From the IMG/VR virus record IMGVR_UViG_3300031576_000001, positions 62,001-126,000 of that record: 64,000 nt of DNA; one strand, 5' to 3'. Below the pieces are notes generated by a model that had not been told where the DNA came from, made no database searches, and saw only the letters and a list, made by a program, of their open reading frames with translations. Of this stretch, positions 374-31,850 are shown piece after piece. Position 1 is the stretch's first letter; every line of letters begins with the position of its first letter. The position numbers and the translations under genes are program-made.

Positions 374-1684
374 GTGAGACAGCGAACCGCCAGAGCTGAG
401 AGCTTTCTACCCGCCCCGCCCCAAGAGGAGGGGGCAGGTTTTGGTGCGCCCGTCTCTGCGGGTGAGCGCAAGATACCGAAGAACTTCCCGTTTGACCCCA
501 AGGCATTGCAGCCTCTAGCCAGGACCGTGTGGGCGTCGTCGGTAGCCTTGGGTCATGCTCTCACGGCGTACCGCAACTTCAACAGGGTAAAATCCTCTTC
601 GGTGTCCCCGGACGGCTTGCTAGGCGGGCGTGGTTACGTGCTCAAGGTCACGGACCTACGCACTCGACTCTTTCGAGCCTGTGAGGAGCTATCGTCGGTG
701 ATTGACACGTTGCACGACGAGATAAATGCGCCTCACTGGCAGCCCAAGCTAGCGGACCTGGACGCTAACTCGGCTGAGGACATCCTTCATCTTCTCGACG
801 AAGCCGATTCAACCATGAAAGACCCCGAGGAGGAAGCCGATGAGAAGATCGACGACCTGGAGTCTGAAAATGACGGTCCTGGGGGCACGTCTACCAAGGA
901 GCGCTTTGGTGATAAGGAGACCCCTGGCTCGGATCTGCCCAAGGGGGGCAACGCTGACGAGCTAACCAAGACGCCGGGTAGCTCACGCAACAAGCTAGCC
1001 TCTTGGGACTATCAGCCCGCGACCAACCCCAAGGACACCTGGACGAACATCCCCGGTGGACCCCGTGTGCCTTCTCTGGACAGGAATCTGATTGAAAACT
1101 CCCCTGGGGGCTCGGCTAACGTGGGCGAACCCTCTTCGGAGCGCAACAGGGAGCGCACCCGCGAAGAGACCGACGAGAACAAAGGTATCAAGTTTTACGC
1201 TGCCGTAGCCTACTCGGTACTACCAGACGGCTCCCTTGAGCCCCAAAACACGGTAGACGACTTCGGGCTTGGGTACGGCGCCAAGGGTCCAAACTACAAC
1301 CCCCCTCAGTCTGACGGCAAGGGTATTACCGGACCCACAAGCGGTCTACCCGCTGGACCCCCGGCAAGCAAGGTCAGTCCTTGGGATTCGGACTCGACCC
1401 TGGTAACGGAGCGCCAGGTAAATGACACCACGCGCCACGGACAGTCCAAGCTGCCCCAGCCCCCGCTGAACGTGTCCCCTGTCGCCAGGTCTGACTATTA
1501 CGAGGACAAGGGGCTCCAACCCCTTACCGCAGAGAGCACCCTACCCCAACCCCAGGACGCCATGACGCCAACCGATACCGATCTTCCTGGGGCGAGTGCC
1601 ATGTTTGACCCGCGCGATACCGGCTACCGTAGGTGGGACGTTATACCCGTGGTCAAGCCCGACCCCCTTACCAGTCGAAAGTTA
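374..1684 (+). CDS. Hypothetical Pro/Gly/acidic-rich head-module protein (436 aa), ending at TTA 1682-1684
   Basis: First part of track ORF 374..3907. In-frame AAG TTA CCC ATG at 1679-1690. Confidence 0.55.
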
Positions 1685-4293: not shown

Positions 4294-4304
4294 CGGGAGT
4301 GTAC

Positions 4305-4835
4305 ATGCCACCAGATGAAAATGAACCAAAGACAGAATTGGTCGAGGACAAACGCCCCCCGGTTCTGGTGCCTATGTACCAGAGAACCCGAGCCGACCAC
4401 GTAAGCGCCCTAGTCAGAGCCAAAGATGCTCACGTTCGCACGGACCCTCTGGTCAAGACGGTAGCTGACAAGAGCCCCCCGAAAGACATACTCGACGGGG
4501 TGCTACTTGAGCTAGCCAAAGAGGCTGCCGCGCTGGGGTTCGCAATTCGCGAAGTGGACAAGACCGGGCGGGATAGCTCCAAGCTGTCCAGGTCAAGAGC
4601 GGACGTGCTTGGTAAAATAGCCGTGATTGCCGTAGACCGTAATCGCATGGGTACGGACGAGCTAGACCTCCGGTCAAGCAAGGTCCAACTCCTGTTCAAC
4701 CTCTGGATTACTAACCTGTCCAAGGTCGCCCGCGATACCATGACACGCGAGCAAGCTGACCTGTTCTTCTCCAAGCTGACCGCTGCCATGGCCGGCTGGG
4801 AGAATGAGGCAGAGTCCAACCTGAAAGGCGTATTA
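4305..4835 (+). CDS. Putative terminase small subunit (176 aa), ending at TTA 4833-4835
   Basis: Helical-looking protein directly upstream of terL; TTATG overlap with the terL start. Function inferred from position only. Confidence 0.45.
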
Positions 4836-6844
4836 TGCCCTCTCAGGACAAGCGACCTAACACCCCGTCCATGGCGTCTCTGCTCGCCAAAGCAGGGCGT
4901 GACGTGGTGCAATCCCAGGACGCTGACGTTCCCGTTGCCGACCCCTCGGGACGCCCAGCTACCGCCAGAATCTTCAACATCATAGATTACATTGAGGCTC
5001 CCTGGGGCTTGGATATGAAGGTCTTTCCTGTCCAGCGCTTCATTATCAAGATGTTCTACAATCTCCCGCTAGATGACACGCTACCCGCGGGCGAGACGCA
5101 ACGCATCACGGTAACGGATATGTTCCGTACTAAGACATACCACACATTTACCGAGCGTGAGTATCTGCAATACCTTTATGACGAGGGGCGTTGTAATCTC
5201 TCAGAGCAAGACAACGACCGAAGAGAGCTTATCTTGGTGTGTGGGAGAAGGAGCGGCAAAACCCTCATAGCTGGCATTTTTGCTTCTTATGAGATATATC
5301 GCCTACTCTCTCTAGTGAATCCGCAGAAGTATTACGGACTACCGCAAGGTGACCGTATTCAGATAATCAGCGTAGCTACGGACAAGGAACAGGCGGGCAT
5401 TCTCTTCAACGGAGTCACGGGACACATTACCAAGTGCGACTATTTCACCCCGTACCTGGCACGTAACACACAGAGCAATGTCACGTTCCGCACCCCCTTT
5501 GAGATAGAGAAATACGGGGACACGATACGGCAGGGTGACGGCAAGTTTGTCTCGTACAACGGCAAGGCTAGCCTACGGCTGGCGTTCAAGTCGTGCATCG
5601 CTAAAGGGCTTCGTGGTTCTGGCAACATTGTCATTGTGCTCGACGAGTTTGCACACTTTCAGGTAAAGGGGCAGGCGTCAGCCAAAGAGATATACGACGC
5701 CATCACCCCGTCAAAAGCAGCGTTCTCGCCTAAAGACCCTACAAACCCTATGCGACCAATAGGAGTGGTGGAGTCTCGTGTCATCCTGATTTCCTCTCCG
5801 CTCAACAAGGAGGGTAAGTTCTACGAGCTATTCCACCAAGCCATGGCAAAGGGTCCAGGCTCCGAAAACCTCTTGGCGATTCAGGTGCCGACCTGGGAAA
5901 TGAACCCCACGGTAGAGGCTGGTTACCTCAAAGAGAAGTACTACTCAGACCCGCCCGTGTTCATGGTGGAGCACGGGGCAGAGTTTTCTGACCGCCTCCG
6001 GGGCTGGCTAGAGCGCGAGGAGGACTTGCTTGCTTGCATCGACCCGTTGCACCGCCCCGTGGACCGAGGGGTGCCCCGTGTGCCCTACTTTATGGGTATC
6101 GACGTGGGGCTCATCCATGACGGCACGTCTATCTTCCTCTCGCGCCTCGACGGGGACCGCATTGTGGCGGACTACCACGAGACCTGGCACGCAGGCATCC
6201 CCTGGAAAGAGAGCAACCCTCACCTTCTTAGCCCAGGGACCATGTACGCCAACGGGCTCGACAAGGTAGAACGCCTTGACTTTGACGAGATCGCCAACTG
6301 GATCGTCTCTCTCTGCCAACGGTTCTACGTGGTCGGGGGTCTCTTTGACCGCTGGAATGGTATCCCCTTGGAGCAAGCGCTACACAAGAGGGGTCTCACC
6401 CAGTTTCAGTCTGATTTCTTCTCAAAAGACCAGCGCAGCAAGATGTACCAGGCGGCAAAGATGATGATTTTCGACAAGAAAGTCATCCTGTATGACTGGC
6501 CGCGCCCAGAGGGGGGTAAGGTGGGGAGGTCACCCTTCATTCGTGAGCTTCTCAACCTTCAGGCACACCAGTACACTGCCAATTTGGTGGAGGTCGCCGC
6601 GCCCGCGGTTCCTGGGGCGCACGACGACACGTCAGACGCTTTTACTCGCTCGGTCTGGCTAGCCACGGAGCAGTTGAAAAACAGGAAGATCGTGGCTAGC
6701 CCCTTTGCAGGGGGTGCGCGCCCCACGTCGCCCGGAGCCTCCACGGTGAGCTACGCCGTGCAGAAAGCACGTAACCACGGGCTATTCACGGATAGACTCT
6801 CCCCTAACTCGGCTCTGGGTCGGCGCCTGACGCGGCGTCGCTAA
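4835..6844 (+). CDS. terL: Terminase large subunit
   Basis: Walker A (LVCGRRSGKT), Walker B (IVIVLDEFAHF), motif III (ILISSP), RNase H-like nuclease (MGIDVG...HDDTSDA). Confidence 0.93.
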   Translation: MPSQDKRPNTPSMASLLAKAGRDVVQSQDADVPVADPSGRPATARIFNIIDYIEAPWGLDMKVFPVQRFIIKMFYNLPLDDTLPAGETQRITVTDMFRTKTYHTFTEREYLQYLYDEGRCNLSEQDNDRRELILVCGRRSGKTLIAGIFASYEIYRLLSLVNPQKYYGLPQGDRIQIISVATDKEQAGILFNGVTGHITKCDYFTPYLARNTQSNVTFRTPFEIEKYGDTIRQGDGKFVSYNGKASLRLAFKSCIAKGLRGSGNIVIVLDEFAHFQVKGQASAKEIYDAITPSKAAFSPKDPTNPMRPIGVVESRVILISSPLNKEGKFYELFHQAMAKGPGSENLLAIQVPTWEMNPTVEAGYLKEKYYSDPPVFMVEHGAEFSDRLRGWLEREEDLLACIDPLHRPVDRGVPRVPYFMGIDVGLIHDGTSIFLSRLDGDRIVADYHETWHAGIPWKESNPHLLSPGTMYANGLDKVERLDFDEIANWIVSLCQRFYVVGGLFDRWNGIPLEQALHKRGLTQFQSDFFSKDQRSKMYQAAKMMIFDKKVILYDWPRPEGGKVGRSPFIRELLNLQAHQYTANLVEVAAPAVPGAHDDTSDAFTRSVWLATEQLKNRKIVASPFAGGARPTSPGASTVSYAVQKARNHGLFTDRLSPNSALGRRLTRRR

Positions 6845-6922
6845 GAGACAGGCTCCTACAAACCTCGGTGTGCCTCTACCCGACGCGGCGTCGTTTAGTC
6901 CCCACGCCAGGGGGTACGAACG

Positions 6923-7177
6923 GTGTCTGCCTCTGACCCTGACCCCCTTGTGTTTGCCAACCGCATCCTTCACATGATGCTCAGGAACCTCTTTGCTGAA
7001 AAGTACAAGGTTGCGCCCCCTGACTACTTGCGAATGCGGGTGGTCTTTCGCAAGCTAGGCGGCTCCTGGCAAGACGTGTGGGATGGCGACCCCGACCAAG
7101 TACACCTCTTGCAAAGCATCGTCAAAGCCTGGGGCAACATGCCGGGTCATGCTAACCTGAGCAGTGAGGTTGTTTAG
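6923..7177 (+). CDS. Hypothetical protein (84 aa)
   Basis: Fills the gap between terL and the paralog triplet; TAG stop. Confidence 0.55.
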   Translation: MSASDPDPLVFANRILHMMLRNLFAEKYKVAPPDYLRMRVVFRKLGGSWQDVWDGDPDQVHLLQSIVKAWGNMPGHANLSSEVV

Positions 7178-7179
7178 TC

Positions 7180-7698
7180 ATGCCAGACTTCCCCCGTAAC
7201 CGAGACTGTCACGCCCTCTTTCGGGGGGACTCGTTTCCGTCCCTCATTGACAACAATCTTGTCAACGGGGGCTGGAGTGGGGGGTCTGGCGTAGAGTGGA
7301 CCACGCCGTTCAAGGATGAGCCTGTGGTAACCCGTACCGATGGGTACGCTTGCGGGTTCATCCTGTTTGGGTCGAGTGAGTCGTCGGACCAGTACACTGC
7401 CAGTACACACCAGAGCCTCACCTACCGCTACAGTGAGATTTGCTCCGGGGGTTGGCTTATCTCGACCCTCAGTTACGAGAAGTACACCTACGCCTCTCGG
7501 CTCATCCCCCCCTTGGTGCTCATCAATTACCTGCCCACAGACCGGCTGGTATTCTCCCTGAGAGGGTTGTGGACCAAGGAGGACGAGTGGACCCTCTCAG
7601 GTGACCCGAGGGCGCCTAACCAGTACTACGCCGGGGGTGTGGTACAAACACCCACACAAGCCACGTCCTTCTACCTCACCTTGCAGTCCTACCTCTTA
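7180..7698 (+). CDS. Paralog 1 of tandem triplet, possible capsid decoration/cement-type protein (172 aa, TTA stop)
   Basis: Shares YEKYTYASRLIPPL and FSLRGLWTKEDEWTLSxDPRAP with the next two genes; TTATG overlap at 7696-7700. Confidence 0.7.
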
Positions 7699-8213
7699 TG
7701 CCATCTACCTACCCCCCAAGAACCCGAGACTGCGTGGTCTCTTACCGTAGCGTCCGCTACTCGGTCAGGGTAGACCCTGCGGTCAAGTTCTGGCAGGGGG
7801 GTCAGGGCTTTCGGTGGGACGACTCCCCCCTGGACGAGATCCGGGTTACGTCCACGGACGGCTACGGGGCGGGTTTTGCGCTCTTCGGGTCAGATGAGGT
7901 CCATGACCAGCTAACGGCCATGTCAGGCAACCAGCCGTTGCACGAGTTCTTGACGCTGGGGGTGGGCACCTGGCTTATCTCGACCCGGACTTACGAGAAG
8001 TACACGCTGGCGTCGCGGACCATTCCCCCGCTCATTCCCTTGGTCTACGCGCCCAACGAGCCATTGTACTTCAGCCTGAGAGGGTTGTGGACCAAGGAAG
8101 ACGAGTGGACGCTTTCACTGGACCCGAGGGCGCCCTCCCCGGTGGTGGCTCGCGTACAGATGCCCCCCTCTTTGCTAACCGATGACTACCTCTCCCTTCA
8201 CACGGCGCTTTTA
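7698..8213 (+). CDS. Paralog 2 of tandem triplet (171 aa, TTA stop)
   Basis: Same motifs; TTATG overlap at 8211-8215. Confidence 0.7.
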
Positions 8214-8716
8214 TGCCTGAGATCGCTCGCACCCGAGATTGTGTCCTGTTTTACAAGGGCGATGTGTACGCCGTGGAGACCAACCTCACGTTCTGGCTAG
8301 GAGGTCAGGGCGCCAGGTGGGTACAGTCCCCGGGAGACCACCGTGTAGTCACCACGTCGGACGGTGGTTTTGGGGGGTACTTCCTCTGGGGCAGTGATGA
8401 GGCGTCAGACCAGTACAACGCAATGACCGGGCAGTTCTTGCGGTATGGTTACGCCGTGTTCTCTGCGGGTGGTAGTGTCTTCTCGACCACGACGTATGAA
8501 AAGTACACTTACGCCTCTCGACTCATCCCACCCCTCGTCCCTCTGATTTACAATGCGGGGGAGCCTCTGTACTTCAGCCTGAGAGGGTTGTGGACCAAGG
8601 AAGACGAGTGGACGCTTTCACTGGACCCGCGCGCTCCGGCGTCCGTAGCTGGGTACTGTGTGCAAGTACCCAAGACCGTCAACCGCTTCTTCCTGGGTGT
8701 GTACACCACCCTCTAG
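8213..8716 (+). CDS. Paralog 3 of tandem triplet (167 aa, TAG stop)
   Basis: Same motifs; its TAG aligns with the TTA of paralogs 1 and 2. Confidence 0.75.
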   Translation: MPEIARTRDCVLFYKGDVYAVETNLTFWLGGQGARWVQSPGDHRVVTTSDGGFGGYFLWGSDEASDQYNAMTGQFLRYGYAVFSAGGSVFSTTTYEKYTYASRLIPPLVPLIYNAGEPLYFSLRGLWTKEDEWTLSLDPRAPASVAGYCVQVPKTVNRFFLGVYTTL

Positions 8717-10969: not shown

Positions 10970-13900
10970 ATGATGGACGGGAGACTAGCGACCAAAGACA
11001 AGCCCGAGCGTGAAGACGAGGAGGTGGACCGCCTTCATCGCCCCTCGCCTCACGTCAAGCCCCCCCGGCACGACAAGCGCCGTGAGCAAATACAGCCCGA
11101 CGCTGACCCGGACCTGGACGAGTCTGATCCTGACCTCTCCCTCAACCGCCGAGAGGTAGGGGGCTCATCCGTAGCCCAGCGCGTCTTGGCTCGTCTACTG
11201 CAAGCCAAAGGCGCCGAGACGGACAAGGTAACGGTACGTAACACCGAGACGGACAAGGTAGTCCAGGTCAACCCCGAGACCGTTCAAGAGAACCCCGGCA
11301 AGTACGAAGAGGTCAAGGACGACGGCTCCGAGGCAGAAGAGCCCCACCTGACCACGGCGATCCGTGAGAGGCTCAAGTCTGACCCTGGCTTTGCGTCGAT
11401 GGCCAAGGCGCTGTCAGACCCCAAGAGCATGGGGAAGATTGACGATGGGAAGCCCCTGCCGGAGACGCTGGCTAAAGTCTTTCCAGGGCTAAAGACCTTC
11501 GGTGAGGCACGCAAGACGGTTTCCGAGGCTAGTAAAGCTAGCCCGCCCGCCAAGAAGGTGCCTCCGGTCAAGCTACTCGACGACGCCAAGCCAAAGCCTG
11601 TCCACCCCCCGCGCCCTCCCCGCCCTCAGAAGCCAGCCAAGCCGGCGCCCCCGGACGTGCCCAACAAGGACCGCCCCGACAAGGACGCCCCCAGGGATAC
11701 CTACGACGGCAAACCCAAAGAGGAGGGACCAAAGCCACCCTCCAAGCGATACCTTGACGACGAGAAGCTAAAGCCCCCTGGCGCACCGTCACCCGGACCC
11801 AAGCCCGCACCCTCCTCTAAGGATGAGCCTGCCAAGCCGCCAGCGGAACCAGCTAAGCAAGAGGGTCAAGAGAAACCCCCTACCCAAGCGGAACCAACTA
11901 GGCAAGAGGGTCAAGCTAAGCCTACCCCCAAGGCGCAGACCCCTTTTGATGACTGGGTTGCCAAGGGGGGTCTCTCTGACCCTGGCTTTCAAGAGTACCT
12001 GGACAGTGCGCCGGAGAACCTACGGACTCCAGGTACTCCTGTCTTGGTGTGGAACCCCCAGAAGAAGACCCGTGAGCCCTTTGCAGACCTCCCTCCTGAG
12101 CAACAGAAGGCTCACTTTGAGGAGTGGTCCGCAGACACCAAAGCCAAGCAGCAAGAGGCTGAGGCTAAGGCAGAGGAGCAAGCCACCCTACAGCGAGACG
12201 CCCTCTACACGGAAGCCTTCAAGAAGAACCCCAAGGTCGCCAAGCTACTGCAAGCCCTGTCGGACCCTGCCTCTGAGCCGTCCAAAAGACTAGCCGAGCT
12301 AGGTAAGAAGAAGGGTGTGGGGGCTCTTGTGCCCGAGAAAGTATTCCCTGAGCTAGCCGGGCTGCCCACCCTTGAAGTGACCAATGACTTGGACCGCCTT
12401 GCCTCTTTCGCCAAGAGGACCAGGAAGGACTGGGCGCCGGACCCCTACGAGGGCAAGTCTGACCTGAAGGAATTTGTGGACGGGGTAGCCAAGGAGGAAG
12501 AGACCTATTTCCTAGAGTACGCTCTGACCCCGAAGAACAAGCCTCGGATCAAAGTACCCAAGGGTAAAACCCTCAAAGGGTACGTAGCCTCCCTTCCGGT
12601 CGCAGACCAAGAGAAGCTGTTCAACGACTTTGCGAAGCACCTCGACCAAAAGAACCTGAGCACTGACGTGCAAAAGCTGTCTGCCGGCTCCCCAGAGCTA
12701 GCCAAGACTCTGCAAGCCATGTTTGACCCTCGCTCCCCTCTCAGCAAGAAAGCTGCGGAGAATACACAGCTACCCGCTAGTGAACTGCACCCTAAACTAG
12801 CGCACTTCAAGAATGTAACCGTAGGAGAGCTTCTCAAAGCCAGTAAGCCCCTCTTGGTGCCCCCCAAGCTGCCTACGCGCGAAAACTTCACCTACCGACA
12901 GCAGCTAGACGCCCTCAACCTCTTGGACCGCACGTTCCCTGAGAAGACCGCCAAAAGACTCTACGAGCTACACCCAACAGACATTGCCTCGGTCGTAGCC
13001 GCGTACAAGGCTACGCAGTCCAAGGGCGCTACCCTCCCTGAGAAGCTGTTGAAGTCGGGTGGGTTTCAGACTGACATTAATAAGGTGCGACCCCCCTTGA
13101 CGTGGGAGGTCTCAGGTAAGACGGTCCCGTTCTCTAGCCTGGACGAGAAAGCCCAAACTGACGCCTACCTACAGCACAGGGCGATGGTTGTGGCTGCCAG
13201 CCTGCAAGCTGAGGACACACTAGCCTCGACCTGTGAGAAGGGCGGCGTCCCCAAAGAGGCTAGCCGGCTCTTCGCCAGGGTCAGGATGGACACCGTGCCT
13301 GGGGAGTCCCCGGAGGAGCGTACCGAGCGTGCGACGGTCATAGGACGCAAGGCTCACGACCACGCGGTAACCACGGCTGCCCCTGTCATTGAGAACCCCA
13401 AGGAAGCCCTGTCTATCTTCGCCCACGGTAAGCTCAGGGACGAGGCGACCCACAAGATCGCCCTGCAATACAGCAAGGGGGCAGATTATCGCTCCTTTAT
13501 TGACCGGTTCCTGTCACGCAAGGCAAAAGACCCCCTCTCTGAGCACGACACGGTGTCTGGCGCCATGTTCAAGGTCAAAGCCCTCTCCGAAGAGGTAGAC
13601 CGGCGCTCCAAGCAGTACCCCAAGGAAGACCAAGGCTTCTTTCGCACCATGAAGGGTGACCTACGGGCGTTCTTCATGGAAAGGCTAGCCAACCTGAGCC
13701 CCAAGAAGGCGGACCTTCTAAGCGTTGCCCTTGAGGACTCGCGTAGCTCTCCCTGGGCAGAGGGGCTGTTGCCGCCCAAGCCCCAAGCCAAGGGAATCAA
13801 GTCCTGGCTAAGCTCCCACCTGAAACTAGCCTCTTATGCCGGGGCTGTAGGTACACAGTTGACCGAGAGAACTAGTAACTACCGCGGGGTCGCCCCCCTT

Positions 13901-14473
13901 CCTCGCACTCCGTACCCCCCGTGGCTCCCCGTGGACCACGTAACGGAGGGTGACGCTACCCGCCTCTTGGCTGACGCCAGGAAGCGCCTGGACCTCTCCG
14001 TTCCCGGTCGCGTACCGGACAGTGCGTACCGAGAGGCTCTAGACCTCGCGGTCTACACCCTGGATAACGGTGCCTTCTCTCGTGGTCTGCACCCCACCGT
14101 GTACAACGCTCTCCTGGCAAAACTCTCTGGGCAACCTGTAGCCCCTACCGACACCCTCTTGACCGTACAGAAGAAAGCCATGCTCACACAGAAACTCGCC
14201 TCTGACCTTCGCGCCCTGGCTACCAAGGTAGCCGAAGAAGCCCCCCAAGCAGCCTTTGAGATCGTGGAGCTAGCCGAGAAGGTAGCCCAAGACCAAGGCG
14301 AGCAGGATCAAGCTCCCGAGCAGAAACAAGCTCAGGACCAAGAGCAAGGGCAAGGTCAGCAGCAGAAGCAAGCCTACCTTACGCTACGGTCCCTAGTCAT
14401 CAAGACGGCTCATGCCTCTCAGGACAAGGCACCCTTCCTGCCTATACTCCGGCACCTCAAGGCTCAGGGCTTA
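10970..14473 (+). CDS. Large Pro/Lys-rich head-associated protein (1167 aa, TTA stop)
   Basis: Between portal and protease; low-complexity linker; only in-frame TTA found is at 14471, 8 codons before the track stop. Confidence 0.6.
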
Positions 14474-14514: not shown

Positions 14515-14889
14515 ATGGCTTTCAAGCTAGCAACACAAGACGCAGAGCGTATTCTTTCCAACCTGGACCAGGCGTCACAGGTCATCCAAGCCGGCGTAGA
14601 GGCAGGAACCCTCAAGCTGGCTTTCGAGGATGCCAAGGCGATTGTCAACTCACTGGATCAGATTGCCGACCGTATTGAGTACGGTACGTTTGGCAAGCAG
14701 TCCTTTGAGAAGAGGATGGCAGAGGTCATCAAGCGTGAGCCTGACGAGAAGTACATGGACACGTTCAAGAACCCCATGCAGCCCCACGTCACGGACAAGG
14801 ACGAGCCGTACATGGCCGCCTACTCGGATGACCAGTCCTCTGCCATGATTCACGGCAAGAGCACCACAGGGCGCCCGCTCGCTCCCTTA
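14515..14889 (+). CDS. Hypothetical head-module protein (124 aa, TTA stop)
   Basis: Ends GRPLAP-TTA, which leaves AGGAGG (SD of the next gene) in intergenic space. Confidence 0.65.
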
Positions 14890-14915: not shown

Positions 14916-15614
14916 TTGCTAGATTACTGGGCACTCGCCAAAGACTTTCACCAGGGGGACGCGGTTCAGAAGATCAACCCCGTCAACGGGAGTCTTGGTC
15001 CCTACGTGGGCGTTATCAAGCACGCTCACCCGGGGCTGGGGGTGCTTGACATTCAGTGGCCCTTTGGTGTCGAGCGCATTCACCCGGACGAGGTAGTCAA
15101 GGTCAACCCTGAGTTGATGTTGCACCTACCGCCCACGCTCAACCAAGTTTACGGTACGTGGGACACCCGGAGGCTGGCGTCCGCGAGAACCTCTTGGTAC
15201 CCCTTCCCGCCGGGCATCTATACGGACATGGCTCAGGCTTGGCACCACGGCAGGGGTGCTGTGGGCGTGTACGACGACCTTTACCGCAAGTACTCGGGGC
15301 TAGACGACCTAGTGCTGAGAGGCGAGGTCAGCAAGTTCTACACTGCCGCCAAGGTCTTTGGTGACTATCGTGTAGCTCACCACGCGGTAAGGACCGCGAG
15401 CTACTGGGTAGCCGAGAACCGGCAGTACAGGGTCACGGCGGACGAGCTAGACGCCCGTAAGCCCAGGTGTCCCAAGTGTGGGACACGGATGCGCAAGACC
15501 ACCTACAAGATGAAGAAGGGTGAGCGTCACCGCTTGCTAGCTTGCCCCAAGGATCTCTTCTTGGTGAAGACCACGGACATGCTTGGACCCGACGGAAAGG
15601 CAGTGGACTGGTTA
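14916..15614 (+). CDS. Hypothetical protein with C-terminal CxxC Zn-ribbon (232 aa, TTA stop)
   Basis: TTG start with AGGAGG upstream; RCPKCG...LACPKD; ends VDW-TTA at 15612. Confidence 0.65.
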
Positions 15615-15630: not shown

Positions 15631-18552
15631 ATGGCATTCCTCAAGTACGCCCGCTCCACGGTGCTGAAAAGCGACGTGAACTTCGATTCGTGGAACGATA
15701 GCCACAAGGGCAATGCGTTTCAGAATCGAGAGGCGCGTCGTATTGTGGTGGACCGCGTAAGCTCCAAGGACTACCTGCTTTCGCACTGTACCATTGTCGC
15801 CAGCGCCGACGCAGAAGAGTCAGGACTACCTCTGGGTAGGCACCTTGTTGACGGCTTTGAGGTCAATCGCCAGTTCTCTGACTTCTACGTAAAGCAAGAC
15901 TCTGAACTTTTTTTCAACAACAACCATGATGGGTGGTCTCGTCCGTTGATCCTGGGGACGTACAAAACATTTATAGGCTCCCCCTCATACATTGAGCACT
16001 GTCAAATACCAGAGTACGCTAAGGGTAAAATCCTAGACGCTGTAGCCAGGGATGTTGGCCCCTCAGTTTACGTTGACATTCTTGTGGGTACAGAGCGCAA
16101 GCACAAGCCGCTTATCGCTGCAATTCTGTCGAGAAAGATCAACGCCCTCAGCATGGGGTGTAGCATCCAATTTTCTTGCTGCACGCAATGCGGTAACGTG
16201 GCTGCGGACGAGACCGAGCTTTGTTTTCCTCCTGGGACTAGAGTGCTTAGGTCGGATGGCCTCTACACTCCGATAGAAGAGTTGGTCTCTGGTGATGTGG
16301 TTCTAACACACAAAGGAAACGCGCGTACTATCACTGAGACCACTTCTAGAGACTACTCTGGGGAACTAGTGCAACTCCGTGTTGACGGCGTGCCCACACC
16401 ACTACGATCCACACACTCCCATCCGTATCTTGTTTTCCGCCCGAAGACTGTTTGTGCTTGTGGTTGCGGTCAACCCCTAGCAAGAACGGTAGAGCACAGG
16501 AGAGGAGCCGCTAAGGCATTTGAGAGAATGTATCTTCCTGGGCACAACACTCATGAAGGCATTGCACAACACAAGCTAGTTTCTATCACTCCTGAATTTG
16601 TAGCGGCGCGAGACATAGCGGAAGGAGACTATCTAGCCTTTCCTGTGACTGGGGAGTTCTGCAATACGCCGGATGGCACCGAAGAGAAAGCTAAACTCAT
16701 AGGTTACTTTGCGTCAGAAGGCTCATTTATTAAAAGACGAGGTAAGCGAGTCGGGGTTTCATTTGCTTTTGGGGCTCACGAGTCAGAAACTTTGGTAGCT
16801 GATGTTGTAAAACTTTTGGAGTGCGTCTTTGGTGGGGTTAGAAAGGCGCCCGTTGTGCTCTGGGAGGATGCTGTCCAGAGGGATGGTACACTGCCTGTAA
16901 AACGACGCTCAACTAGCCGGGTGGTCCCTGAAGACCTTACTTGCCCATCGTGCGCAGCGCCCTCTGTGTACTTGAGAAACGCTTCATTCAAAAAAGGATC
17001 TCAGTGCTACCAGTGCAAGGTATGCCACAGGTCTTTTGTACTCGGTGCAGAGCGATATAAGCGGGCGCGTGTGTACCAGAGTGGAAACTCCTGTGACGTG
17101 CGTTTCTTGTGCGACAAGGCCGCCGACTTTTTCTATCGGCACTGCGGCGAATACGCCTCGACGAAGAGACTATCACCCGAGGTGATGTCGTGGCCACAAG
17201 AGCTACAAAGACACGTTTTGTGGACTTGGTTGTGTGGTGACGGCTCCCAAACTTCTGGTGAGGGTGTGAAGGGCACGAGCGTATCCTTTAACTTGATAAG
17301 TCAAATGCACCTCATCGCGGCAAGGTGTGGTCTTTATGCTAGGCGCGCTGTTGTCTTTGGTGGGCGTAGTGTTGCCGTGGGGGATGTCGTAGGGTCAGAT
17401 GGGATTGCAAGATTGCGGGATGCACGGGGGTGGCTGCCTACTTTTGTATTGGTCCTTCCGGCGCCTCAAGACCTCAAAGGAATTCTACGGTTCACAGACA
17501 AAGCACGTAAAACTCTTGCTCGCGTTACGTCGGGATACAAGCGGGTGGGTGATTACCTGCTCTATCGTGTTCGTAAGAAGTCTTGCGTTCCATACTCTGG
17601 TAAAGTTTACAATGTGGAAGTGGCTGATGACCATTCTTATGTGGTTGATGGTGTTGCAGTACACAACTGTAACCATATCAAATTCTTCAAGGGTAACTAC
17701 TTCATTGACCCTTACGGTAAGAGGCGCCGCGTAGGAGAGTTCTGTGGACACGCCTCTGACCTTGAGTCTAACAAATTCGTTGAAGCCTCTTGGGTGGGTA
17801 ACCCCGCTTTCGATGGCGCTGTGCTCAGGAACATCCTCAACGCCAGTGACTTTGATAAGACCGCCTACGGCAACCCCGACACGGTGTTCTCGTTCCCGTC
17901 CGTGTCCTTCGTACCCCCCGCAGGCGTCAAGCTAGCTAATCAGCAAGACGACCCCTTTGCTACGCCCTCTCAGGGTGACGCTGGTGCGGGCGACAGCAAA
18001 GCCAAGACTGAGAAGCCACCCCTAGAGGACGCCGTGAAAGACCTTCACGACACCCTCAAGGAAAAAGTGGTCGAGAATGTGCGCAAAGAGCTAGACGACG
18101 CCACGGGGGACGCCGCGCTCAAAGTCACTCAGTCTCCGCAGAACGAAAACGAGAACCTGATCAAGTCAGCCGCTAGCTCGCCCCTCTGGCGTAAGCGGGT
18201 GGCTTTCCTCTCCCCGTACCTCAAGAGCTACACGCCCTCCTTTAATAGGAGGCTGCTGGCGGGCTTGATTAGGGTACAGGCTTTTGGGTGGGGAAATCTC
18301 AAGACCGCAGGCTACGCACCCGAAGAGGTCTTGGTTCTGTCCTACCTCGTTGACCGAATGAAGGGCAAACCAGCCTTTGCCGGGGAGCGTAGGCTTTACG
18401 CCGCGCTTAGCAAGGCTGACCTGAACGCCCCTTGTCACTCGGTTTCCCTCTCTCTCGGTAGACCGCTGACCGCTACGGAGCAGTCCCTTGTGCTTGAAAA
18501 GTGCAACCTCCTCCAAAAAATACACGCAAACTCACTGATACAATCAACCTTA
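15631..18552 (+). CDS. Putative prohead (maturation) protease precursor containing an intein (973 aa, TTA stop)
   Basis: Between portal and scaffold/MCP; LSMGC and FVEASWVGNPA motifs resemble assemblin/HK97-type proteases; only in-frame TTA is at 18550. Confidence 0.65.
16222..17667 (+). mobile_element. Intein (482 aa) with LAGLIDADG endonuclease and extra Cys-rich inserts
   Basis: Starts CFPPGTRV, block B STHSHP, LIGYFASEG and LWTWLCGDG motifs, ends VYNVEV...VAVHN followed by Cys+1. Confidence 0.92.
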
Positions 18553-18569
18553 GAAGAGGCACTCTGACC

Positions 18570-19802
18570 ATGACTCGTCGTCGCACTACCTGGGCTGCTT
18601 ACCAAAAGACAGCCGACCCTTACCTCATGAACCAAGATCACGTCAACCAGCAACCCGGTGCGGGCGACTACCTCACGGGTGACCCCTCTTCGTGGAAAGA
18701 GGACGTGAACCCCGAGAACCGTTGGGAAGATGAGTACAAGGGCGACCAAGTAGCCCGTGACGAGATTGGCATGGGCGAGATGCGCTCCGAGACGTTCAAC
18801 CACCCCGAGAAAACTGCTAACATGGATCGTGACTACCTCCTCAAGAAGGCCAGCGTTTGTGAAAAGGTAGCCCGCCGTATGCTGGGCAGGACCGCCTCGG
18901 ACGCGGCTATCGAGGACCAGAGCCTAGCCCTCATGGACCTCTCCGATGCTGACCTCCTCGGCACCTATGACCGCCTTGCCAATGACCAACAGGGTCAGGG
19001 TCAAGAGGAGCAGAAGCAAGCTCAGCAGCAAATGCCCGCTCAAGGGCAACAGCAACAGGGTCAGCAAGCTCAACAGCAGCAAATGACCCAGGCTCAGCAG
19101 CAAGAAATGCAGGCTCAGCAACAGGCAGAGCAAGCCATGCAACAGGCTATGCAAGCCATGGCTCAGGGCGACCAAGTTGTCGCTGACCAAGCCATGCAGC
19201 AAGCTGTTGACGCACAGTCGAAGTGCGCCGGCATGACCGTAGCCAAGGCTGCCTCATTCGTGGCTCGCAAGTTTGCCACCCTCATGGTCAAGGCAAACCA
19301 GGGTCAGCAAATGCCCTTCCAGGGTCAGCAACAAGCTCAGCAGGGGCAACAGCAGCAAATGCCCGCCCAGGGTCAGCAGCAACAGGCGCCCGCGCAAGCC
19401 CAGCAGCAGATGCCTGCTCAGGGTCAGCAGCAGCAAATGCCGGCTCAAGACCAGCAGCAGCAGCAAGGTCAAGACCAGCAAATGCTGGAGTCGATGCTCA
19501 TGGAGGGTGACCCCGAAATGGCAGAATTTGACGTTGAGCTAGAGGCTCCCGAAATGGGTCTCGACGTGATGGACCAAGACCTTTCGATGGTCTTTGCGGG
19601 TCAAGAGGCTCAGGACGCTCAACAGGGTCAGCAAGCTCAAGAGGGTCAAAACAAAGAGGCTCGTGGCAAGACTGCCTCTCGCAAGCCCGTAGCCAAGCTA
19701 GGCGGCGCCCCCTCTTCGCAGACCATGCCGACCGACGTAGGCAACCTCTCTTCCATGTGGAAGTCGGCGCCCGACGTAAGCAAGGTCTTCTTCGGAGGCT
19801 TA
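18570..19802 (+). CDS. Gln-rich scaffold-like protein (410 aa, TTA stop)
   Basis: Between protease and capsid genes; QQMPAQGQQQQ repeats; ends MWKSAPDVSKVFFGG-TTA followed by a hairpin. Confidence 0.55.
18985..19480 (+). repeat. Imperfect intragenic tandem repeats encoding Q-rich (QQMPAQGQQQQ) units
   Basis: Repeated cagcaaatgcc(c/g)gc(t/c)ca(a/g)gg units; boundaries approximate. Confidence 0.8.
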
Positions 19803-19812
19803 CCCTCCCCCT

Positions 19813-19843
19813 GGGCTAGCAAAGCTGAACCCTCTGCTAGCCC
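19813..19843 (+). terminator. 8-bp stem-loop right after the TTA stop of the scaffold-like gene
   Basis: GGGCTAGC (19813-19820) and GCTAGCCC (19836-19843); no clear U-tract. Confidence 0.35.
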
Positions 19844-19998
19844 GCCAAGTGCAAAACGCACTCAGACACGATTTCTCACATGATGCGTTTATCCTAACGA
19901 CAACAGGTGAGATACTAGCAACACCCAGCTAGGAAAAAACTGCGTAGGGTGCTTAAATGTGAATGAGTTAGTTGCCCCCCGTGGCAAGGAGCGAATTC

Positions 19999-20625
19999 AT
20001 GTCCCTCTTTGGTCAATCGTCGGGTGACTTCAAGGAAACGTCGGGTCGAATCCAACTTTTCCACGTTGTCACTCGCAATTCCATAGGCTCACTGAGCCCG
20101 GATGCCTTTACACAGGCTAACCCTCCCGTCGTCGTAACCGTGGGCAATCTGTCCACCACCCTCTCAGCCTTGAACGGCAAGCGTGGTGTGTTGGGTAGCA
20201 CGGTGGCCTTTACACGTCCTGACATTGGTAACAACTACCTTGGTGGTCCGGTTCTGGTTGGAGGTCTCTACTCCGCTACGATCAAGCCCCTGGGTATGTT
20301 CATCAACGACTCGCTGGGCAACGCATTCGAGAACACCCCCGGGGTAGCCTCGAACCGTGGACCCTACGTGGCGGGCTCGGGTTCGTGTCTCGGTCTGAAG
20401 ATTTACGAGACGAAGCAACAGATCGGTGGCGCTGCCAACTTGGTCTATTCGGCGGGTCAGTGGGTTTACGCCTCGGTCAACGGTCTCATCACCAACCGTA
20501 TCGAGGACGCCTACGAGTACAACGTGGCGGGTCAAGCAGACCCGGACTTCGTAACCGTCATGGGTATCATCAAGCGCGTCCCAGACGCCAGCAACGACAT
20601 CATGGTCATTGACGTGAGGGCTTGA
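19999..20625 (+). CDS. Putative capsid decoration protein (208 aa)
   Basis: AAGGAG SD; directly upstream of MCP; Gly-rich beta-type sequence. Function inferred from position. Confidence 0.55.
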   Translation: MSLFGQSSGDFKETSGRIQLFHVVTRNSIGSLSPDAFTQANPPVVVTVGNLSTTLSALNGKRGVLGSTVAFTRPDIGNNYLGGPVLVGGLYSATIKPLGMFINDSLGNAFENTPGVASNRGPYVAGSGSCLGLKIYETKQQIGGAANLVYSAGQWVYASVNGLITNRIEDAYEYNVAGQADPDFVTVMGIIKRVPDASNDIMVIDVRA

Positions 20626-20637
20626 AAGGAAACTACC

Positions 20638-21528
20638 ATGATACAGCAACAGACCCAAGTATCCAACGCTTACAAGCAAAAGGTCATCGGAGAGCTGATC
20701 AAGACCGCCGCCGGTCGCTCCAAGATCGCAGCCTCCATGATCCAGCCCCTCCGGCTGCGTAGGGACTACACCTCGGTCAACCGCAAGACGTACCTCGTCG
20801 AGCAGCTACCGGACGGCGCTCTGCCGATCTACGACAAAGACCCGGACGTTACCGCCTACGTGGTAGGCGAAGAGGGTGAAAGCATCCTGGCAATCCAGAA
20901 GCCCCGCAGGGTCATCTTCCCCCTGTTCGAGCTAGCCAGCAACCCCGAGATCCCCCTCACCCAGATCAAGGAGCGGCGTTTCGATCTAATCGAGCGCGCC
21001 CAAGACCTCGGTAAGGCTCAGATCCAAGCAGCAGAAGACGAGCGTGGCTTTGCCATTCTCGACAGCATAGCGGTCAACGGGTTTGACACACTGCCCGGCC
21101 AGACCAACCCCGACGTGAACGTGGTTGCCCCTCTGAGCCCCTCGGTGCTGGCAGACGCCTTCGCAGAGATCGAGCGTCACGACCTGCGTGTCGCCCGTAT
21201 CTTCATGAACGCCACGGATTACGCGGATATCCGTAAGTTCGGTCGCGACATTCTCGACATCGAGTCGCAAGCCAACCTGCTCAAGACCGGTCTGCAAGCC
21301 ACCCTCTGGGGAGCCCAGATCATCACCAGCCGCTTGGTCCCGGTGGGCTTTACCTACCTTTGCTGCGAACCGGAATTCTTCGGGCGCATCCCCGTGAGGA
21401 CCGAGCTCTCGGTTATCAGCGCCGACGATCCGAAGGCTCGCACGATAGGCTTCTCTATCTTCGAGAACCTGGGGATTGGGGCATTCAATCCGCGGGGCGA
21501 GTGCCGCATGGTCATCACCCGCGCGTTA
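20638..21528 (+). CDS. Major capsid protein (HK97-like fold, 296 aa, TTA stop)
   Basis: GAAAGGA SD; FELASNPEIPLTQIKERRFDLIERAQDLGKAQIQAAEDERGF pattern and position; ends VITRA-TTA-GGG-TGA. Confidence 0.8.
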
Positions 21529-21540
21529 GGGTGACCATAG

Positions 21541-21601
21541 CAGCCTGAAAAGGCTGTGAAACAAAACGAGGGGGGTGCTTCCGCAAGGGGGTGCCCCCCT
21601 C
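21541..21601 (+). terminator. Two GNRA-tetraloop hairpins downstream of MCP
   Basis: CAGCCT-GAAA-AGGCTG (21541-21556, perfect) and a G/C-rich stem with GCAA loop (about 21568-21601). Confidence 0.5.
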
Positions 21602-21708
21602 GTCTATTTGTCCAGCCTGATGGTTTTGTAACGTGTAGTAGTCTAGCCCTGACAAGGTTACGAAACCTGTTGACAGAGCATCTTGGGCAGTTTACTACAC
21701 ACTCCAAG

Positions 21709-24387: not shown

Positions 24388-24390
24388 TTT

Positions 24391-24864
24391 GTGCTACAGT
24401 CACCTTGTACCATGGTTGACGACCGCACTTACCCTAACGTACTTCAAGCCCTGTTGTCTGACATCCTGGCGATCCTACCCGGTGTGGCGGTTCACGTTAC
24501 GGACCACGGTAAGACATGGTGGGCCGAAGCCTCACACGGTAAGCACACGGTAGCCATAGAGGTCTTCCCCCACGGAACACCCACCTACGGTTACAGTGTA
24601 GTCAACAGTGAGACTGTGGCGGGCGTTGGGCACTCCTACGGGTCAGATACCACCCTCTCCGTGGTTTGCGATATAGGAGACCTCTTGGAAGTTCGGGGTG
24701 ACCTCCTCACCCTACTCAACCGTGTACCGGAGGCTCAGCGTGCTTACGAGCGATACGGGGAGTTTGTGGGCTGGAAAAACTACGCGGGGCTACGTATGCC
24801 CTCTTGGGATGAGGTTCCAAGCAAGATCAAGCTGGCGTGGTGCTACTCTCTTGGGTGGGACTGA
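24391..24864 (+). CDS. Hypothetical protein
   Basis: 157-aa ORF; start may be ATG 24412. Confidence 0.5.
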   Translation: MLQSPCTMVDDRTYPNVLQALLSDILAILPGVAVHVTDHGKTWWAEASHGKHTVAIEVFPHGTPTYGYSVVNSETVAGVGHSYGSDTTLSVVCDIGDLLEVRGDLLTLLNRVPEAQRAYERYGEFVGWKNYAGLRMPSWDEVPSKIKLAWCYSLGWD

Positions 24865-24926
24865 CGGGCTTGTACTAAGAGGCGCACTGGCTTACGGACC
24901 ACGGGTGCGCTAGACTGACGCCAACC

Positions 24927-25181: not shown

Positions 25182-25332
25182 CCCCTTAGAGGGTTAGTAG
25201 TAGCCCCAAACTAAGGTACCACCTCCTTAGAGGCTGCCGTACCCGCGAGTTACGCCCTAGCCTTCTATCCAATGGGACTCTCTTGGTGCATCCTTTTCTC
25301 CCCGAAGCTAAGGCTGTTCGAGGAGATAACAG

Positions 25333-26274: not shown

Positions 26275-26347
26275 GTGCGAGGCTAGAGCCCTCTCGGGTG
26301 GTTTTCTAGCTTAGCCTCCCTAAGCATTATTCCCCGGGGTGCCTTGT

Positions 26348-27622: not shown

Positions 27623-27636
27623 GCCAGATTACACAG

Positions 27637-31848: not shown

Positions 31849-31850
31849 CC

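What the first reader, a model, noticed from the sequence alone, without database searches (positions are those of the whole stretch)
4833..8716. TTATG stop/start overlaps, and paralogs where TTA aligns with TAG
TTATG occurs at 4833, 7696 and 8211, in the same geometry as TAATG (28060) and TGATG (45379) elsewhere in the window. The three tandem paralogs end FYLTLQSYL-TTA, DYLSLHTAL-TTA and FFLGVYTTL-TAG, so TTA occupies the stop column. This is the cleanest internal control for the recoding.
Basis: seen in the sequence. Interest (0 to 1): 0.72.

Follow-up and report, generated by a model that had tools for sequence, protein, structure and literature searches.

The report
Phage that uses TTA as stop
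In this 323-kb cave-metagenome phage the leucine codon TTA marks the end of about 30% of genes, and of the phage's own tmRNA tag, which would be the first sense-to-stop codon change seen outside organelles.

Summary
TTATG at 4833, 7696 and 8211 each joins an in-frame TTA to the ATG of the next gene.

- **Paralogs.** Paralogs 1 and 2 are 172 and 171 aa when stopped at TTA. That matches about 337 outside homologs of 171-173 aa, which end in exactly that column.
- **Codon position.** Across the 322,633-bp phage, in-frame TTA is almost absent inside genes and 17-28x enriched in the last 30 codons. No other codon exceeds 1.9x.
- **Homolog ends.** 26 of 28 informative TTA sites lie where relatives stop or their similarity ends. 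In control relatives G003 and G005 TTA aligns with Leu and the proteins run on.
- **Sister phage.** In L001, TTA and TAA/TGA/TAG interchange at orthologous gene ends.
- **tmRNA.** The phage's own tmRNA tag reads ANDNVEAAPLALAA followed by TTA. Relative G005 has TGA TAG at that place.
- **tRNAs.** The phage carries Leu tRNAs GAG, TAG, CAG and CAA but none with anticodon TAA.

About 96 of 324 genes end in TTA. How termination happens is not shown. No release-factor gene was found, the record is 68% complete and the host is unknown. I infer that a release factor reads UUA, probably a host one.

The parts
4299..4835 (+). 178-aa gene upstream of the terminase, ending in TTA (4833-4835). Table 11 would extend it 50 codons into the terminase gene.
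   Evidence: In 43 of 49 homologs a canonical stop lies within 2 codons of this TTA. The L001 ortholog (177 aa) ends in TGA overlapping the terminase GTG.
4835..6844 (+). Terminase large subunit (669 aa, TAA stop, no in-frame TTA). Its ATG shares its A with the upstream TTA.
   Evidence: phrog_2 terminase large subunit, E 3e-23.
6923..7177 (+). 84-aa gene ending in TAG. Its ortholog in sister phage L001 ends in TTA inside a TTATG overlap with paralog 1.
   Evidence: 53% identity to the last residue (..EVV), then TTA at L001 8960, with ATG at 8962 opening MPEFPRTRDC.
7180..7698 (+). Paralog 1 (172 aa) ending in TTA 7696-7698. TTATG overlap with paralog 2.
   Evidence: 221 of 222 homologs stop within 2 codons of this column, using TGA 142, TAA 43, TAG 36.
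7698..8213 (+). Paralog 2 (171 aa) ending in TTA 8211-8213. TTATG overlap with paralog 3.
   Evidence: 218 of 220 homologs stop within 2 codons of this column. The L001 ortholog ends ..LHTAI-TAA.
8213..8716 (+). Paralog 3 (167 aa) ending in canonical TAG 8714-8716. It serves as the internal reference for the family's C-terminus.
   Evidence: The public gene call for it is only 150 aa (P0001); a read-through of paralog 2 to 8300 under table 11 is the likely cause (inference).
374..1684 (+). 436-aa gene ending in TTA 1682-1684, followed 3 nt later by the in-frame ATG (1688) of a 739-aa gene. Table 11 fuses them into one 1177-aa ORF.
   Evidence: L001, L055 and L057 have a canonical stop in this column and a separate downstream gene starting M(A/G)DLG(D/N)L.
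10970..14473 (+). 1167-aa gene ending in TTA 14471-14473.
   Evidence: The L001 ortholog also ends in TTA.
14515..14889 (+). 124-aa gene ending in TTA 14887-14889.
   Evidence: L001 has TTA in the same column after the identical ..GRPLAP, and similarity collapses beyond it. L079 and L034 have a canonical stop there.
14916..15614 (+). 232-aa gene ending in TTA 15612-15614.
   Evidence: L001 has TTA in the same column after ..KAVDW. 39 of 66 homologs stop within 2 codons.
15631..18552 (+). 973-aa intein-containing gene ending in TTA 18550-18552.
   Evidence: The L001 ortholog ends in TGA five codons earlier.
37191..37388 (-). 65-aa gene ending in TTA (37191-37193), followed by AGGAGG and the ATG of the next in-frame gene (36795-37172). 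Table 11 fuses them.
   Evidence: the sequence reads TTA cgt aga AGGAGG ggc cac ATG.
18501..57899 (.). Further TTA-terminated genes in the window. Stop codons at 19800, 21526, 26272, 27620, 29117, 29749, 34940-34942(-), 39939, 44889, 49613, 50124, 57897.
   Evidence: Homolog stops coincide at 19800, 21526, 29749, 39939, 44889 and 49613 (genome coordinate = window + 62000).

Best explanation
TTA (UUA) is a fourth stop codon in this phage, so its code is formally the same as NCBI table 23. The window lies in a 322,633-bp jumbo phage from a cave metagenome. About 96 of its roughly 324 genes end in TTA (TGA 133, TAA 53, TAG 42), on both strands and along the whole genome.

In the flagged stretch, the gene before the terminase and tandem paralogs 1 and 2 end at TTA. 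That TTA shares its A with the ATG of the next gene (TTATG), just as TAATG and TGATG junctions do elsewhere. The 76-151-nt 'overlaps' seen under table 11 are therefore artefacts of reading through a stop.

- **Shown:** TTA sits in the stop column of conserved proteins. It is never at a conserved sense position. It interchanges with TAA/TGA/TAG between sister phages. It ends the phage's tmRNA tag. The phage's tRNA set has no tRNA to read it.
- **Inferred:** UUA is recognised by a class-I release factor with relaxed second-position specificity (U-A/G/U-A, RF2-like). This factor is most likely supplied by the host, which would then use the same four-stop code.
- **Inferred:** ribosomes terminating at TTATG re-initiate on the overlapping AUG.
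For: 1. **Position bias.** Across the genome TTA is 17x (28x with a codon-usage-filtered gene set) more frequent in the last 30 codons of table-11 ORFs than in their interiors. The next codon reaches 1.9x. Window binomial P = 1e-19. Off-frame TTA is at the normal level for this GC (7.2/1000), so mutation bias is not the cause.
2. **Homolog lengths.** 337 homologs of the paralogs are nearly all 171-173 aa, and all 14 aligned ones end in the column before the TTA.
3. **Systematic test.** At 23 of 34 in-frame TTA sites with homologs, at least half of the homologs have a canonical stop within 2 codons. Most of the remaining sites are second TTAs downstream of a first one. No alignment crosses a TTA without a stop in the subject.
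4. **Controls.** The same test on relatives G003 and G005 gives sense behaviour: the aligned residue is Leu and homolog stops fall at the query's own canonical stop.
5. **Sister phage L001 (75% terminase identity).** Of 14 orthologous gene ends, 3 are TTA/TTA, 5 TTA/canonical, 1 canonical/TTA and 5 canonical/canonical.
6. **In-frame gene pairs.** Nine gene pairs are separated only by TTA, and in all nine the next gene opens in frame 3-45 nt after the TTA. Four have ATG just 3 nt after the TTA and two others show a visible AGGAGG/GAGGAG before the ATG.
7. **tmRNA.** The match is RF00023 at 52.8 bits against a gathering score of 47. The tag frame is ANDNVEAAPLALAA followed by TTA, and the next canonical stop is 29 codons later. 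Relative G005 has ANDNSTAFTAKAA followed by TGA TAG at the aligned place.
8. **tRNAs.** About 40 tRNAs include Leu GAG, TAG, CAG and CAA but none with anticodon TAA, by aragorn (default and relaxed) and by Infernal.
9. **Downstream sequence.** The distance from a TTA stop to the next canonical in-frame stop (median 13.5 codons) equals that after canonical stops (median 16, P = 0.57). The +4 context of TTA stops (G 0.47, C 0.34) resembles that of TGA stops and differs from TTA in general.
10. **Sequence reliability.** An independent assembly of the source reads gives the same sequence.
Against: - There is no protein-level evidence: no mass spectrometry and no ribosome profiling.
- No release-factor gene (RF-1 or PCRF domains) is present in the held 68% of the genome or in three complete relatives, so the agent that would read UUA is unidentified.
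- The host is unknown, and two database scans for a tmRNA with a TTA-terminated tag gave no lead.
- No bacterial release factor is known to read UUA (my own knowledge).
- Homolog evidence shows where the conserved protein ends. It does not prove that the ribosome stops there.
- My 4-stop gene model is home-made, so the count of 96 is approximate.
Confidence: 0.87

Rival explanations
1. UUA is an unassigned ('hungry') codon rather than a true stop. No tRNA reads it in the infected cell. Ribosomes stall, and the peptide is freed by rescue (tmRNA, ArfA/ArfB, peptidyl-tRNA drop-off plus a hydrolase) or by slow near-cognate release.
For: No tRNA-Leu(UAA) is in the phage's otherwise broad tRNA set and no RF gene was found. 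The phage carries a tmRNA and a PTH2-like peptidyl-tRNA hydrolase. Unassigned codons are known to be resolved by rescue and mistranslation in recoded E. coli (PMC6207430, abstract).
Against: The phage tmRNA's own tag frame ends in TTA, so rescue by it would stall again. tmRNA rescue normally marks proteins for degradation, which is hard to reconcile with about 30% of genes ending this way, structural ones included. TTA interchanges freely with canonical stops between sister phages, as expected for equivalent signals. The PTH2-like gene and the tmRNA also occur in G005, and PTH2 in G003, where TTA is sense.
Confidence: 0.09
2. The standard code applies. TTA is a rare Leu codon, the genes really overlap by 76-151 nt, and they carry short unconserved C-terminal tails.
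For: Table 11 gives open frames through every TTA. Gene overlaps occur in phages. TTA is rare in any 58% GC genome.
Against: This cannot explain four things: the 17-28x terminal enrichment unique to TTA; its absence in relatives of equal GC; the column-exact match with canonical stops of homologs; or the fusion of separate genes (1682, 37193). It would also give the tmRNA a 43-residue tag that does not end in ALAA.
Confidence: 0.02
3. The pattern is an artefact or depends on editing: TAA miscalled as TTA by sequencing or assembly, or UUA edited to UAA in the mRNA.
For: TTA differs from TAA and TGA by one base. The window comes from a metagenome assembly.
Against: A second assembler on the source reads gives identical sequence at 12.6x word depth. 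The same habit appears in L001, which comes from another run. A miscall or edit of TTA would not remove genuine internal TTA codons. It would also alter the roughly 3,700 off-frame TTA, yet proteins translated from the DNA align well with homologs. No RNA data were available.
Confidence: 0.01
4. Ribosomes pausing at UUA shift frame into a canonical stop, as at human mitochondrial AGA/AGG.
For: 47% of TTA stops are followed by G, so a +1 shift would read TAG.
Against: The other half are followed by C or T. At all three flagged sites TTATG gives TAT after a +1 shift and NTT after a -1 shift, neither of which is a stop.
Confidence: 0.01

Closest known systems
NCBI translation table 23 (Thraustochytrium mitochondrial code, TTA = stop)
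   Same: The codon table is formally identical: TTA is added to TAA, TAG and TGA as a terminator and all other codons are standard. The ORF listing with TTA=* gives tidy, non-overlapping genes.
   Different: That code belongs to a protist mitochondrion of a few dozen genes. Here it is a 323-kb phage translated on bacterial-type ribosomes (Shine-Dalgarno sites, tmRNA). The origin is certainly independent, and relatives in the same phage family read TTA as Leu.
Stop-codon recoding in huge and crAss-like phages (TAG or TGA read as an amino acid; PMC7162821, PMC7886860)
   Same: A phage genome whose code departs from table 11. It carries many tRNAs, including a CUA-anticodon suppressor-like tRNA, and is mis-annotated by standard gene callers.
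   Different: The direction is opposite. There a stop becomes sense and genes look fragmented. Here a sense codon becomes a stop and genes look too long, overlapping or fused. Coding density does not drop, so the usual screen would miss it.
Non-canonical termination at AGA/AGG in human mitochondria (my own knowledge: first explained by a -1 shift to UAG, later by mtRF1)
   Same: A former sense codon without a cognate tRNA ends reading frames, and a specialised release factor is the leading explanation.
   Different: The human case involves only two genes and an organelle. A frameshift to a canonical stop is excluded at the sites studied here.
Rare UUA codon and bldA tRNA in Streptomyces and its phages (PMC10732093)
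   Same: UUA is singled out as a special, strongly avoided codon whose decoding depends on one tRNA.
   Different: There UUA is a regulated Leu codon, or a bypass take-off site, inside genes. Here it is never at a conserved sense position, no tRNA-Leu(UAA) is found, and GC is 58% rather than about 72%.
Unassigned codons (Micrococcus luteus AGA/AUA, my own knowledge; UAG in RF1-deleted E. coli, PMC6207430)
   Same: A codon with no decoder in the cell. This may be the evolutionary intermediate ('codon capture').
   Different: Unassigned codons are avoided altogether. Here TTA is positively used at about 30% of gene ends and in the tmRNA tag.

Membership tests
Genetic code with TTA = stop (table 23 type) | TTA occupies the stop column of conserved proteins | tested here: met
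   paralog 1 221/222, paralog 2 218/220, pre-terminase gene 43/49 homologs stop within 2 codons. 23 of 34 informative sites genome-wide.
Genetic code with TTA = stop (table 23 type) | TTA absent from conserved sense (Leu) positions | tested here: met
   no alignment crosses a TTA without a stop in the subject. Controls G003 (28 of 30 sites) and G005 (6 of 6) read through with Leu aligned.
Genetic code with TTA = stop (table 23 type) | No cognate tRNA-Leu(UAA) | tested here: met
   Leu GAG, TAG, CAG and CAA are present and TAA is absent. This covers only the held 68% of the genome, and host tRNAs are unknown.
Genetic code with TTA = stop (table 23 type) | An independent, non-protein-coding reading frame also ends in TTA (tmRNA tag) | tested here: met
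   the tag ANDNVEAAPLALAA is followed by TTA. The relative's tag ends ..KAA followed by TGA TAG.
Genetic code with TTA = stop (table 23 type) | A release factor that recognises UUA, with peptide release at UUA | not testable with these tools
   No RF-1 or PCRF domain in G000 or in complete relatives. The host is unknown. Biochemistry or proteomics is needed.
Stop-codon-recoded phages (TAG/TGA to amino acid) | Canonical stop codons in frame inside conserved genes | tested here: not met
   In the flagged region TAG (8714) is a true stop. Genome-wide only one clear in-frame TAG was found, in a PTH2-like gene outside the window.
Stop-codon-recoded phages (TAG/TGA to amino acid) | Suppressor tRNA | tested here: met
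   A CUA-anticodon tRNA at genome c[307803,307877]. One is also present in relatives G002, G003 and G005.
bldA-type regulated UUA sense codon | UUA at internal, conserved Leu positions, read by a dedicated tRNA-Leu(UAA) | tested here: not met
   no internal sense TTA; no such tRNA.
Frameshift into a canonical stop at a hungry codon | A +1 or -1 shift at the codon creates TAA, TAG or TGA | tested here: not met
   TTATG gives TAT (+1) or NTT (-1) at 4833, 7696 and 8211. Only 50% of all TTA stops have G or A at +4.
Termination-reinitiation coupling at one-base stop/start overlaps | Stop and start codons share a base, and the downstream gene lacks its own strong ribosome-binding site | tested here: inconclusive
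   The geometry is met: 8 TTATG junctions genome-wide, against 2 TGATG, 2 TAATG and 4 TAGTG. By eye there is no AGGAGG before 7698 or 8213. Coupling itself was not tested.
Capsid decoration / cement proteins (identity of the three paralogs) | Fold match to solved decoration proteins | tested here: inconclusive
   The model has pLDDT 67. The best PDB matches are decoration or outer-shell chains of the T1, BB1, FCWL1 and Pam3 capsids, but at E 0.02-0.2 and TM 0.4-0.5. The best viral match is Bacillus phage G gp26 at E 1e-3. No Pfam or PHROG match.

The most novel reading that the evidence does not exclude
The four-stop code belongs to the host's translation system, not to the phage alone. An undescribed bacterial lineage in cave or subsurface habitats would then terminate at UUA with an altered RF2-like factor. 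Unrelated branches of this jumbo-phage family (the window phage with L001, and separately G002) would have adapted to it independently. That would be the first natural sense-to-stop reassignment in a free-living cell's code. It would also be invisible to current code-inference tools, which infer an amino acid for each codon rather than a stop.
Probability: 0.4. Interest if true: 0.97.

Novelty: new variant of a known kind. Interest (0 to 1): 0.9.

Why it matters
- **First of its kind.** All natural code changes so far described in bacteria and phages, to my knowledge and in six literature searches, turn stops into sense codons or swap amino acids. Sense-to-stop changes are known only from organelles. 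A phage with TTA as a fourth stop would show that bacterial-type termination can acquire a new codon. It makes testable how a release factor (or something else) reads UUA, and whether codon capture passes through an unassigned stage.
- **Annotation.** Standard gene calling extends, overlaps or fuses about 30% of this phage's genes. It appears to have shortened downstream genes: the public call for paralog 3 is 150 of 167 aa, and paralog 1 of L001 is called 146 of about 172 aa. aragorn under the standard code does not report the tmRNA.
- **Detection.** Screens based on low coding density, or on the amino acid aligned to each codon, would not find such genomes. More may therefore be hidden in existing data.

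Tried and rejected
- **Related phage records.** A blastn search of the region against 50,697 phage records found no match. A terminase pattern scan of viral contigs found no relative. Relatives were reached instead through the paralog family.
- **Pfam.** It gave nothing for the paralogs, terminase or portal. PHROGs named the latter two.
- **Release factor and SmpB.** RF-1, PCRF and SmpB domain searches in the phage and in complete relatives found nothing.
- **Wider distribution.** I first suspected L047, L053/54, L035 and L067 from 20-kb loci. Whole-record analysis showed no strong signal in G001, G003, G004 or G005. Only G002 keeps partial support.
- **Host search by tmRNA tags ending in TTA.** A stricter metagenome scan returned only the phage's own contig. 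There is no host lead.
- **G002's weak tmRNA-like match.** It gave no interpretable tag.
- **Apparent read-through alignments at TTA.** These turned out to be tblastn reading through a canonical stop in the subject, or off-frame similarity caused by the overlapping downstream gene.
- **Frameshift-to-stop.** Rejected from sequence context.
- **Sequencing runs.** No run shown to hold the stretch as RNA was listed, and the search (kind 'any') was not a dedicated RNA search.

Full report
**What is there.** The window is bases 62,001-126,000 of a single 322,633-bp virus record: 58.6% GC, linear, CheckV 68% complete. It was assembled from a cave metagenome.

The flagged stretch lies in the head-packaging module:
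- a 178-aa gene (4299-4835)
- the terminase large subunit (4835-6844, phrog_2, E 3e-23)
- an 84-aa gene (6923-7177)
- three tandem paralogs (7180-7698, 7698-8213, 8213-8716)
- a 121-aa gene
- the portal (9107-10930, phrog_16240)

TTATG occurs at 4833, 7696 and 8211. Each time the TTA is in frame with the upstream gene and the A opens the ATG of the next gene. Under table 11 the upstream frames run on for 50, 25 and 29 codons into the next gene. TAATG at 28060 and TGATG at 45379 are ordinary examples of the same geometry.

**TTA behaves like a stop throughout the genome.**
- In 49 naive table-11 ORFs of the window (18,796 codons) there are only 28 in-frame TTA, against about 150 in each off-frame. 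22 of the 28 lie in the last 30 codons (binomial P = 1e-19).
- The other six are all accounted for. 4833 is itself a flagged gene end, 50 codons before the table-11 stop. Three lie upstream of the likely start. Two are places where table 11 fuses two genes. At 1682 the sequence reads TTA ccc ATG. At 37193 on the minus strand it reads TTA, then AGGAGG, then ATG.
- Genome-wide, TTA is 17x enriched in the last 30 codons relative to ORF interiors. The next codon reaches 1.9x. With a codon-usage-filtered gene set the ratio is 28x.
- A four-stop gene model gives about 324 genes ending in TGA 133, TTA 96, TAA 53 and TAG 42. TTA ends are spread over the whole genome and both strands.
- The sequence after a TTA stop runs to the next canonical stop after a median of 13.5 codons. 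After canonical stops the median is 16 (P = 0.57).
- The base after TTA stops is G 47% and C 34%, like TGA stops and unlike TTA in general.

**Homologs end where the TTA is.**
- Paralog 3, which ends in TAG, has 337 homologs, nearly all 171-173 aa.
- In an alignment with 14 of them, every homolog ends in the column just before the TTA of paralogs 1 and 2. The read-through tails align with nothing.
- By tblastn, 221 of 222 and 218 of 220 homologs carry a canonical stop within two codons of those TTAs. For the gene before the terminase the figure is 43 of 49.
- Over the genome, 34 in-frame TTA sites have upstream homologs. At 23 of them at least half of the homologs stop within two codons. Most of the rest are second TTAs a few codons after a first one.
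- This includes sites where table 11 would add 28-96 more codons.
- Alignments that seemed to cross a TTA all run through a stop codon in the subject. Otherwise they reflect the overlapping downstream gene read out of frame.

**Controls.**
- The same script on related complete phages G003 (448 kb) and G005 (407 kb) gives the opposite result. Their TTA codons align with Leu, and homologs stop at the query's own canonical stop.
- G005 even carries a tRNA-Leu(TAA).
- Of the 75 of the 79 related 20-kb loci that had informative TTA sites (plus the window), only the window (6 stop-like, 0 sense-like) and L001 (5 and 1) are stop-like. Most others have only sense-like TTAs.
- Off-frame TTA frequency in the window (7.2/1000) equals that of relatives with the same GC. 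The pattern is therefore selection on the reading frame, not mutation bias.

**Sister phage.** L001 is a 150-kb Logan contig from a different run. It has 75% terminase identity to the window and groups with it at 100/100 support. It shares the habit. Among 14 orthologous gene ends:
- 3 are TTA in both
- 5 are TTA in the window and TAA or TGA in L001
- 1 is TAG in the window and TTA in L001
- 5 are canonical in both

The TAG/TTA case is a TTATG overlap at L001 8960, which opens paralog 1 (MPEFPRTRDC). After a shared TTA, similarity collapses. This interchange is what synonymous stop codons should show.

**Independent witness: the tmRNA.**
- Rfam finds a full-length tmRNA at genome 30,256-30,633, scoring 52.8 bits against a gathering score of 47.
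- Its tag frame reads ANDNVEAAPLALAA and is followed by TTA. The next canonical stop is 29 codons further on.
- The tmRNA of G005 encodes ANDNSTAFTAKAA followed by TGA TAG at the aligned position.
- aragorn, which assumes standard stops, does not report the G000 tmRNA.
- A tag that begins AND.. and ends ..ALAA is the classical form, so the TTA sits where the tag's stop must be.

**Decoding apparatus.**
- The phage has about 40 tRNAs at 21-31 kb. These include Leu GAG, TAG, CAG and CAA, but none has anticodon TAA, by aragorn (default and relaxed) and by Infernal.
- No RF-1, PCRF or SmpB domain is encoded in the held sequence, nor in three complete relatives.

**How it most likely works.**
- *Shown:* TTA marks the ends of conserved reading frames and is not used as sense.
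- *Inferred:* termination is by a release factor that accepts U at the second position. UUA is one change from both UAA and UGA, the RF2 pair.
- *Argument against stall-and-rescue:* the tmRNA tag itself ends in UUA, so stall-and-rescue would recur at the end of the phage tmRNA's own tag.
- *Argument for a host factor:* TTA stops occur in all genome regions. G002 (complete, 435 kb, 64.8% GC, no Leu-TAA tRNA) also looks like a TTA-stop phage. 10 of its 18 informative sites are stop-like and none is sense-like, and its apparent sense sites are off-frame or lie outside the coding region. Yet it has no RF gene. A host-supplied factor, and hence a host with the same code, is therefore the most economical reading. 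It remains unproven.
- *Phylogeny:* on the terminase tree G002 sits in a different well-supported clade, together with TTA-sense phages. The trait therefore changed at least twice, or tracks the host.
- *Coupling:* the TTATG junctions (8 in the genome), with no obvious Shine-Dalgarno before 7698 and 8213, suggest termination-reinitiation. This is inference only.

**What the paralogs are.** They form a widespread family of about 172 aa with no Pfam or PHROG match, usually in tandem, between terminase and portal in this jumbo-phage family. The model is of moderate quality (pLDDT 67). It weakly resembles capsid decoration or outer-shell proteins and gp26 of Bacillus phage G. I take 'small virion/decoration-like protein' as a low-confidence lead only.

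**Comparison with what is known.**
- The code equals NCBI table 23, but that is a protist mitochondrial code.
- Phage recoding described so far goes from stop to sense (PMC7162821, PMC7886860).
- UUA is special in Streptomyces, but there it is a regulated Leu codon (PMC10732093).
- Six full-text searches found no report of UUA/TTA, or any sense codon, used as a stop in phages or bacteria.

I therefore rate this a new variant of a known kind (natural codon reassignment), in a new direction for this domain of life.

**Caveats.**
- All evidence is comparative. There is no protein or ribosome data.
- The gene model and the counts derived from it are approximate.
- The record is incomplete, and G002's status rests on 18 sites.
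- The host and the terminating factor are unknown.
- The reads check used contigs of the source run, not independent reads.

Noticed in passing
outside the window: genome 30,256-30,633 (L152 10256-10633): Phage-encoded tmRNA whose tag ANDNVEAAPLALAA is followed by TTA instead of a canonical stop. aragorn does not call it. No SmpB gene is present in the phage.
   Followed up: yes
outside the window: genome about 305,799-306,233 (-) and c[307803,307877] (L151 1299-1733 and 3303-3377): A PTH2-like peptidyl-tRNA hydrolase gene (Pfam PF01981, 23 bits, at the cut-off) carries an in-frame TAG. Relatives G005 and G003 have Ala or Glu at that position, and homology continues about 40 aa beyond it. A CUA-anticodon tRNA lies 1.5 kb away on the same strand. 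The large relatives examined (G002, G003, G005) also carry CUA-anticodon tRNAs. TAG may therefore be read through in a few genes, although it is a true stop at paralog 3.
   Followed up: partly
window 8714-8728: The TAG ending paralog 3 is in frame with the ATG (8726) of the next 121-aa gene, with 9 nt between them. With the phage's amber-suppressor-like tRNA, read-through would fuse the two proteins. This is not conserved in L001, which has a TAA stop and a different spacing.
   Followed up: no
window 15631-18552: The 973-aa protein contains an intein-like insert (Intein_splicing, Hint_2 and LAGLIDADG_3, all below the Pfam cut-offs). The L001 ortholog shows Hom_end_hint and LAGLIDADG hits.
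   Followed up: no
G002 = IMGVR_UViG_3300037313_001869 (loci L054, L081-L100, L109-L110): A second, complete (direct terminal repeats, 435 kb, 64.8% GC) phage of the family appears to use TTA as a stop. 10 of 18 informative sites are stop-like and none is sense-like. One example: homologs stop at ..LAMQEH(A)E, where G002 has TTA and table 11 adds 70 codons. It lies in a different terminase clade from the window phage and has no RF-1 domain gene.
   Followed up: partly
window 8213-8716; L001 8962-9480: Public gene calls look distorted by the read-through, which I infer as the cause. The database protein for paralog 3 is 150 aa instead of 167 (P0001). Paralog 1 of L001 is called from 9040 (146 aa) instead of 8962.
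   Followed up: yes
outside the window: genome 25,064-25,150 and 30,730-30,800: Infernal finds two tRNAs that default aragorn misses. One is 87 nt with an apparent insert in the anticodon loop, which relaxed aragorn calls Thr-TGT. The other is a 71-nt Thr-TGT. Neither has anticodon TAA.
   Followed up: partly
window 37173-37193 (-) and genome-wide: Where a spacer follows a TTA stop, a classical AGGAGG Shine-Dalgarno can be seen. The host therefore presumably uses SD-led initiation. The TTATG junctions have no such site.
   Followed up: no
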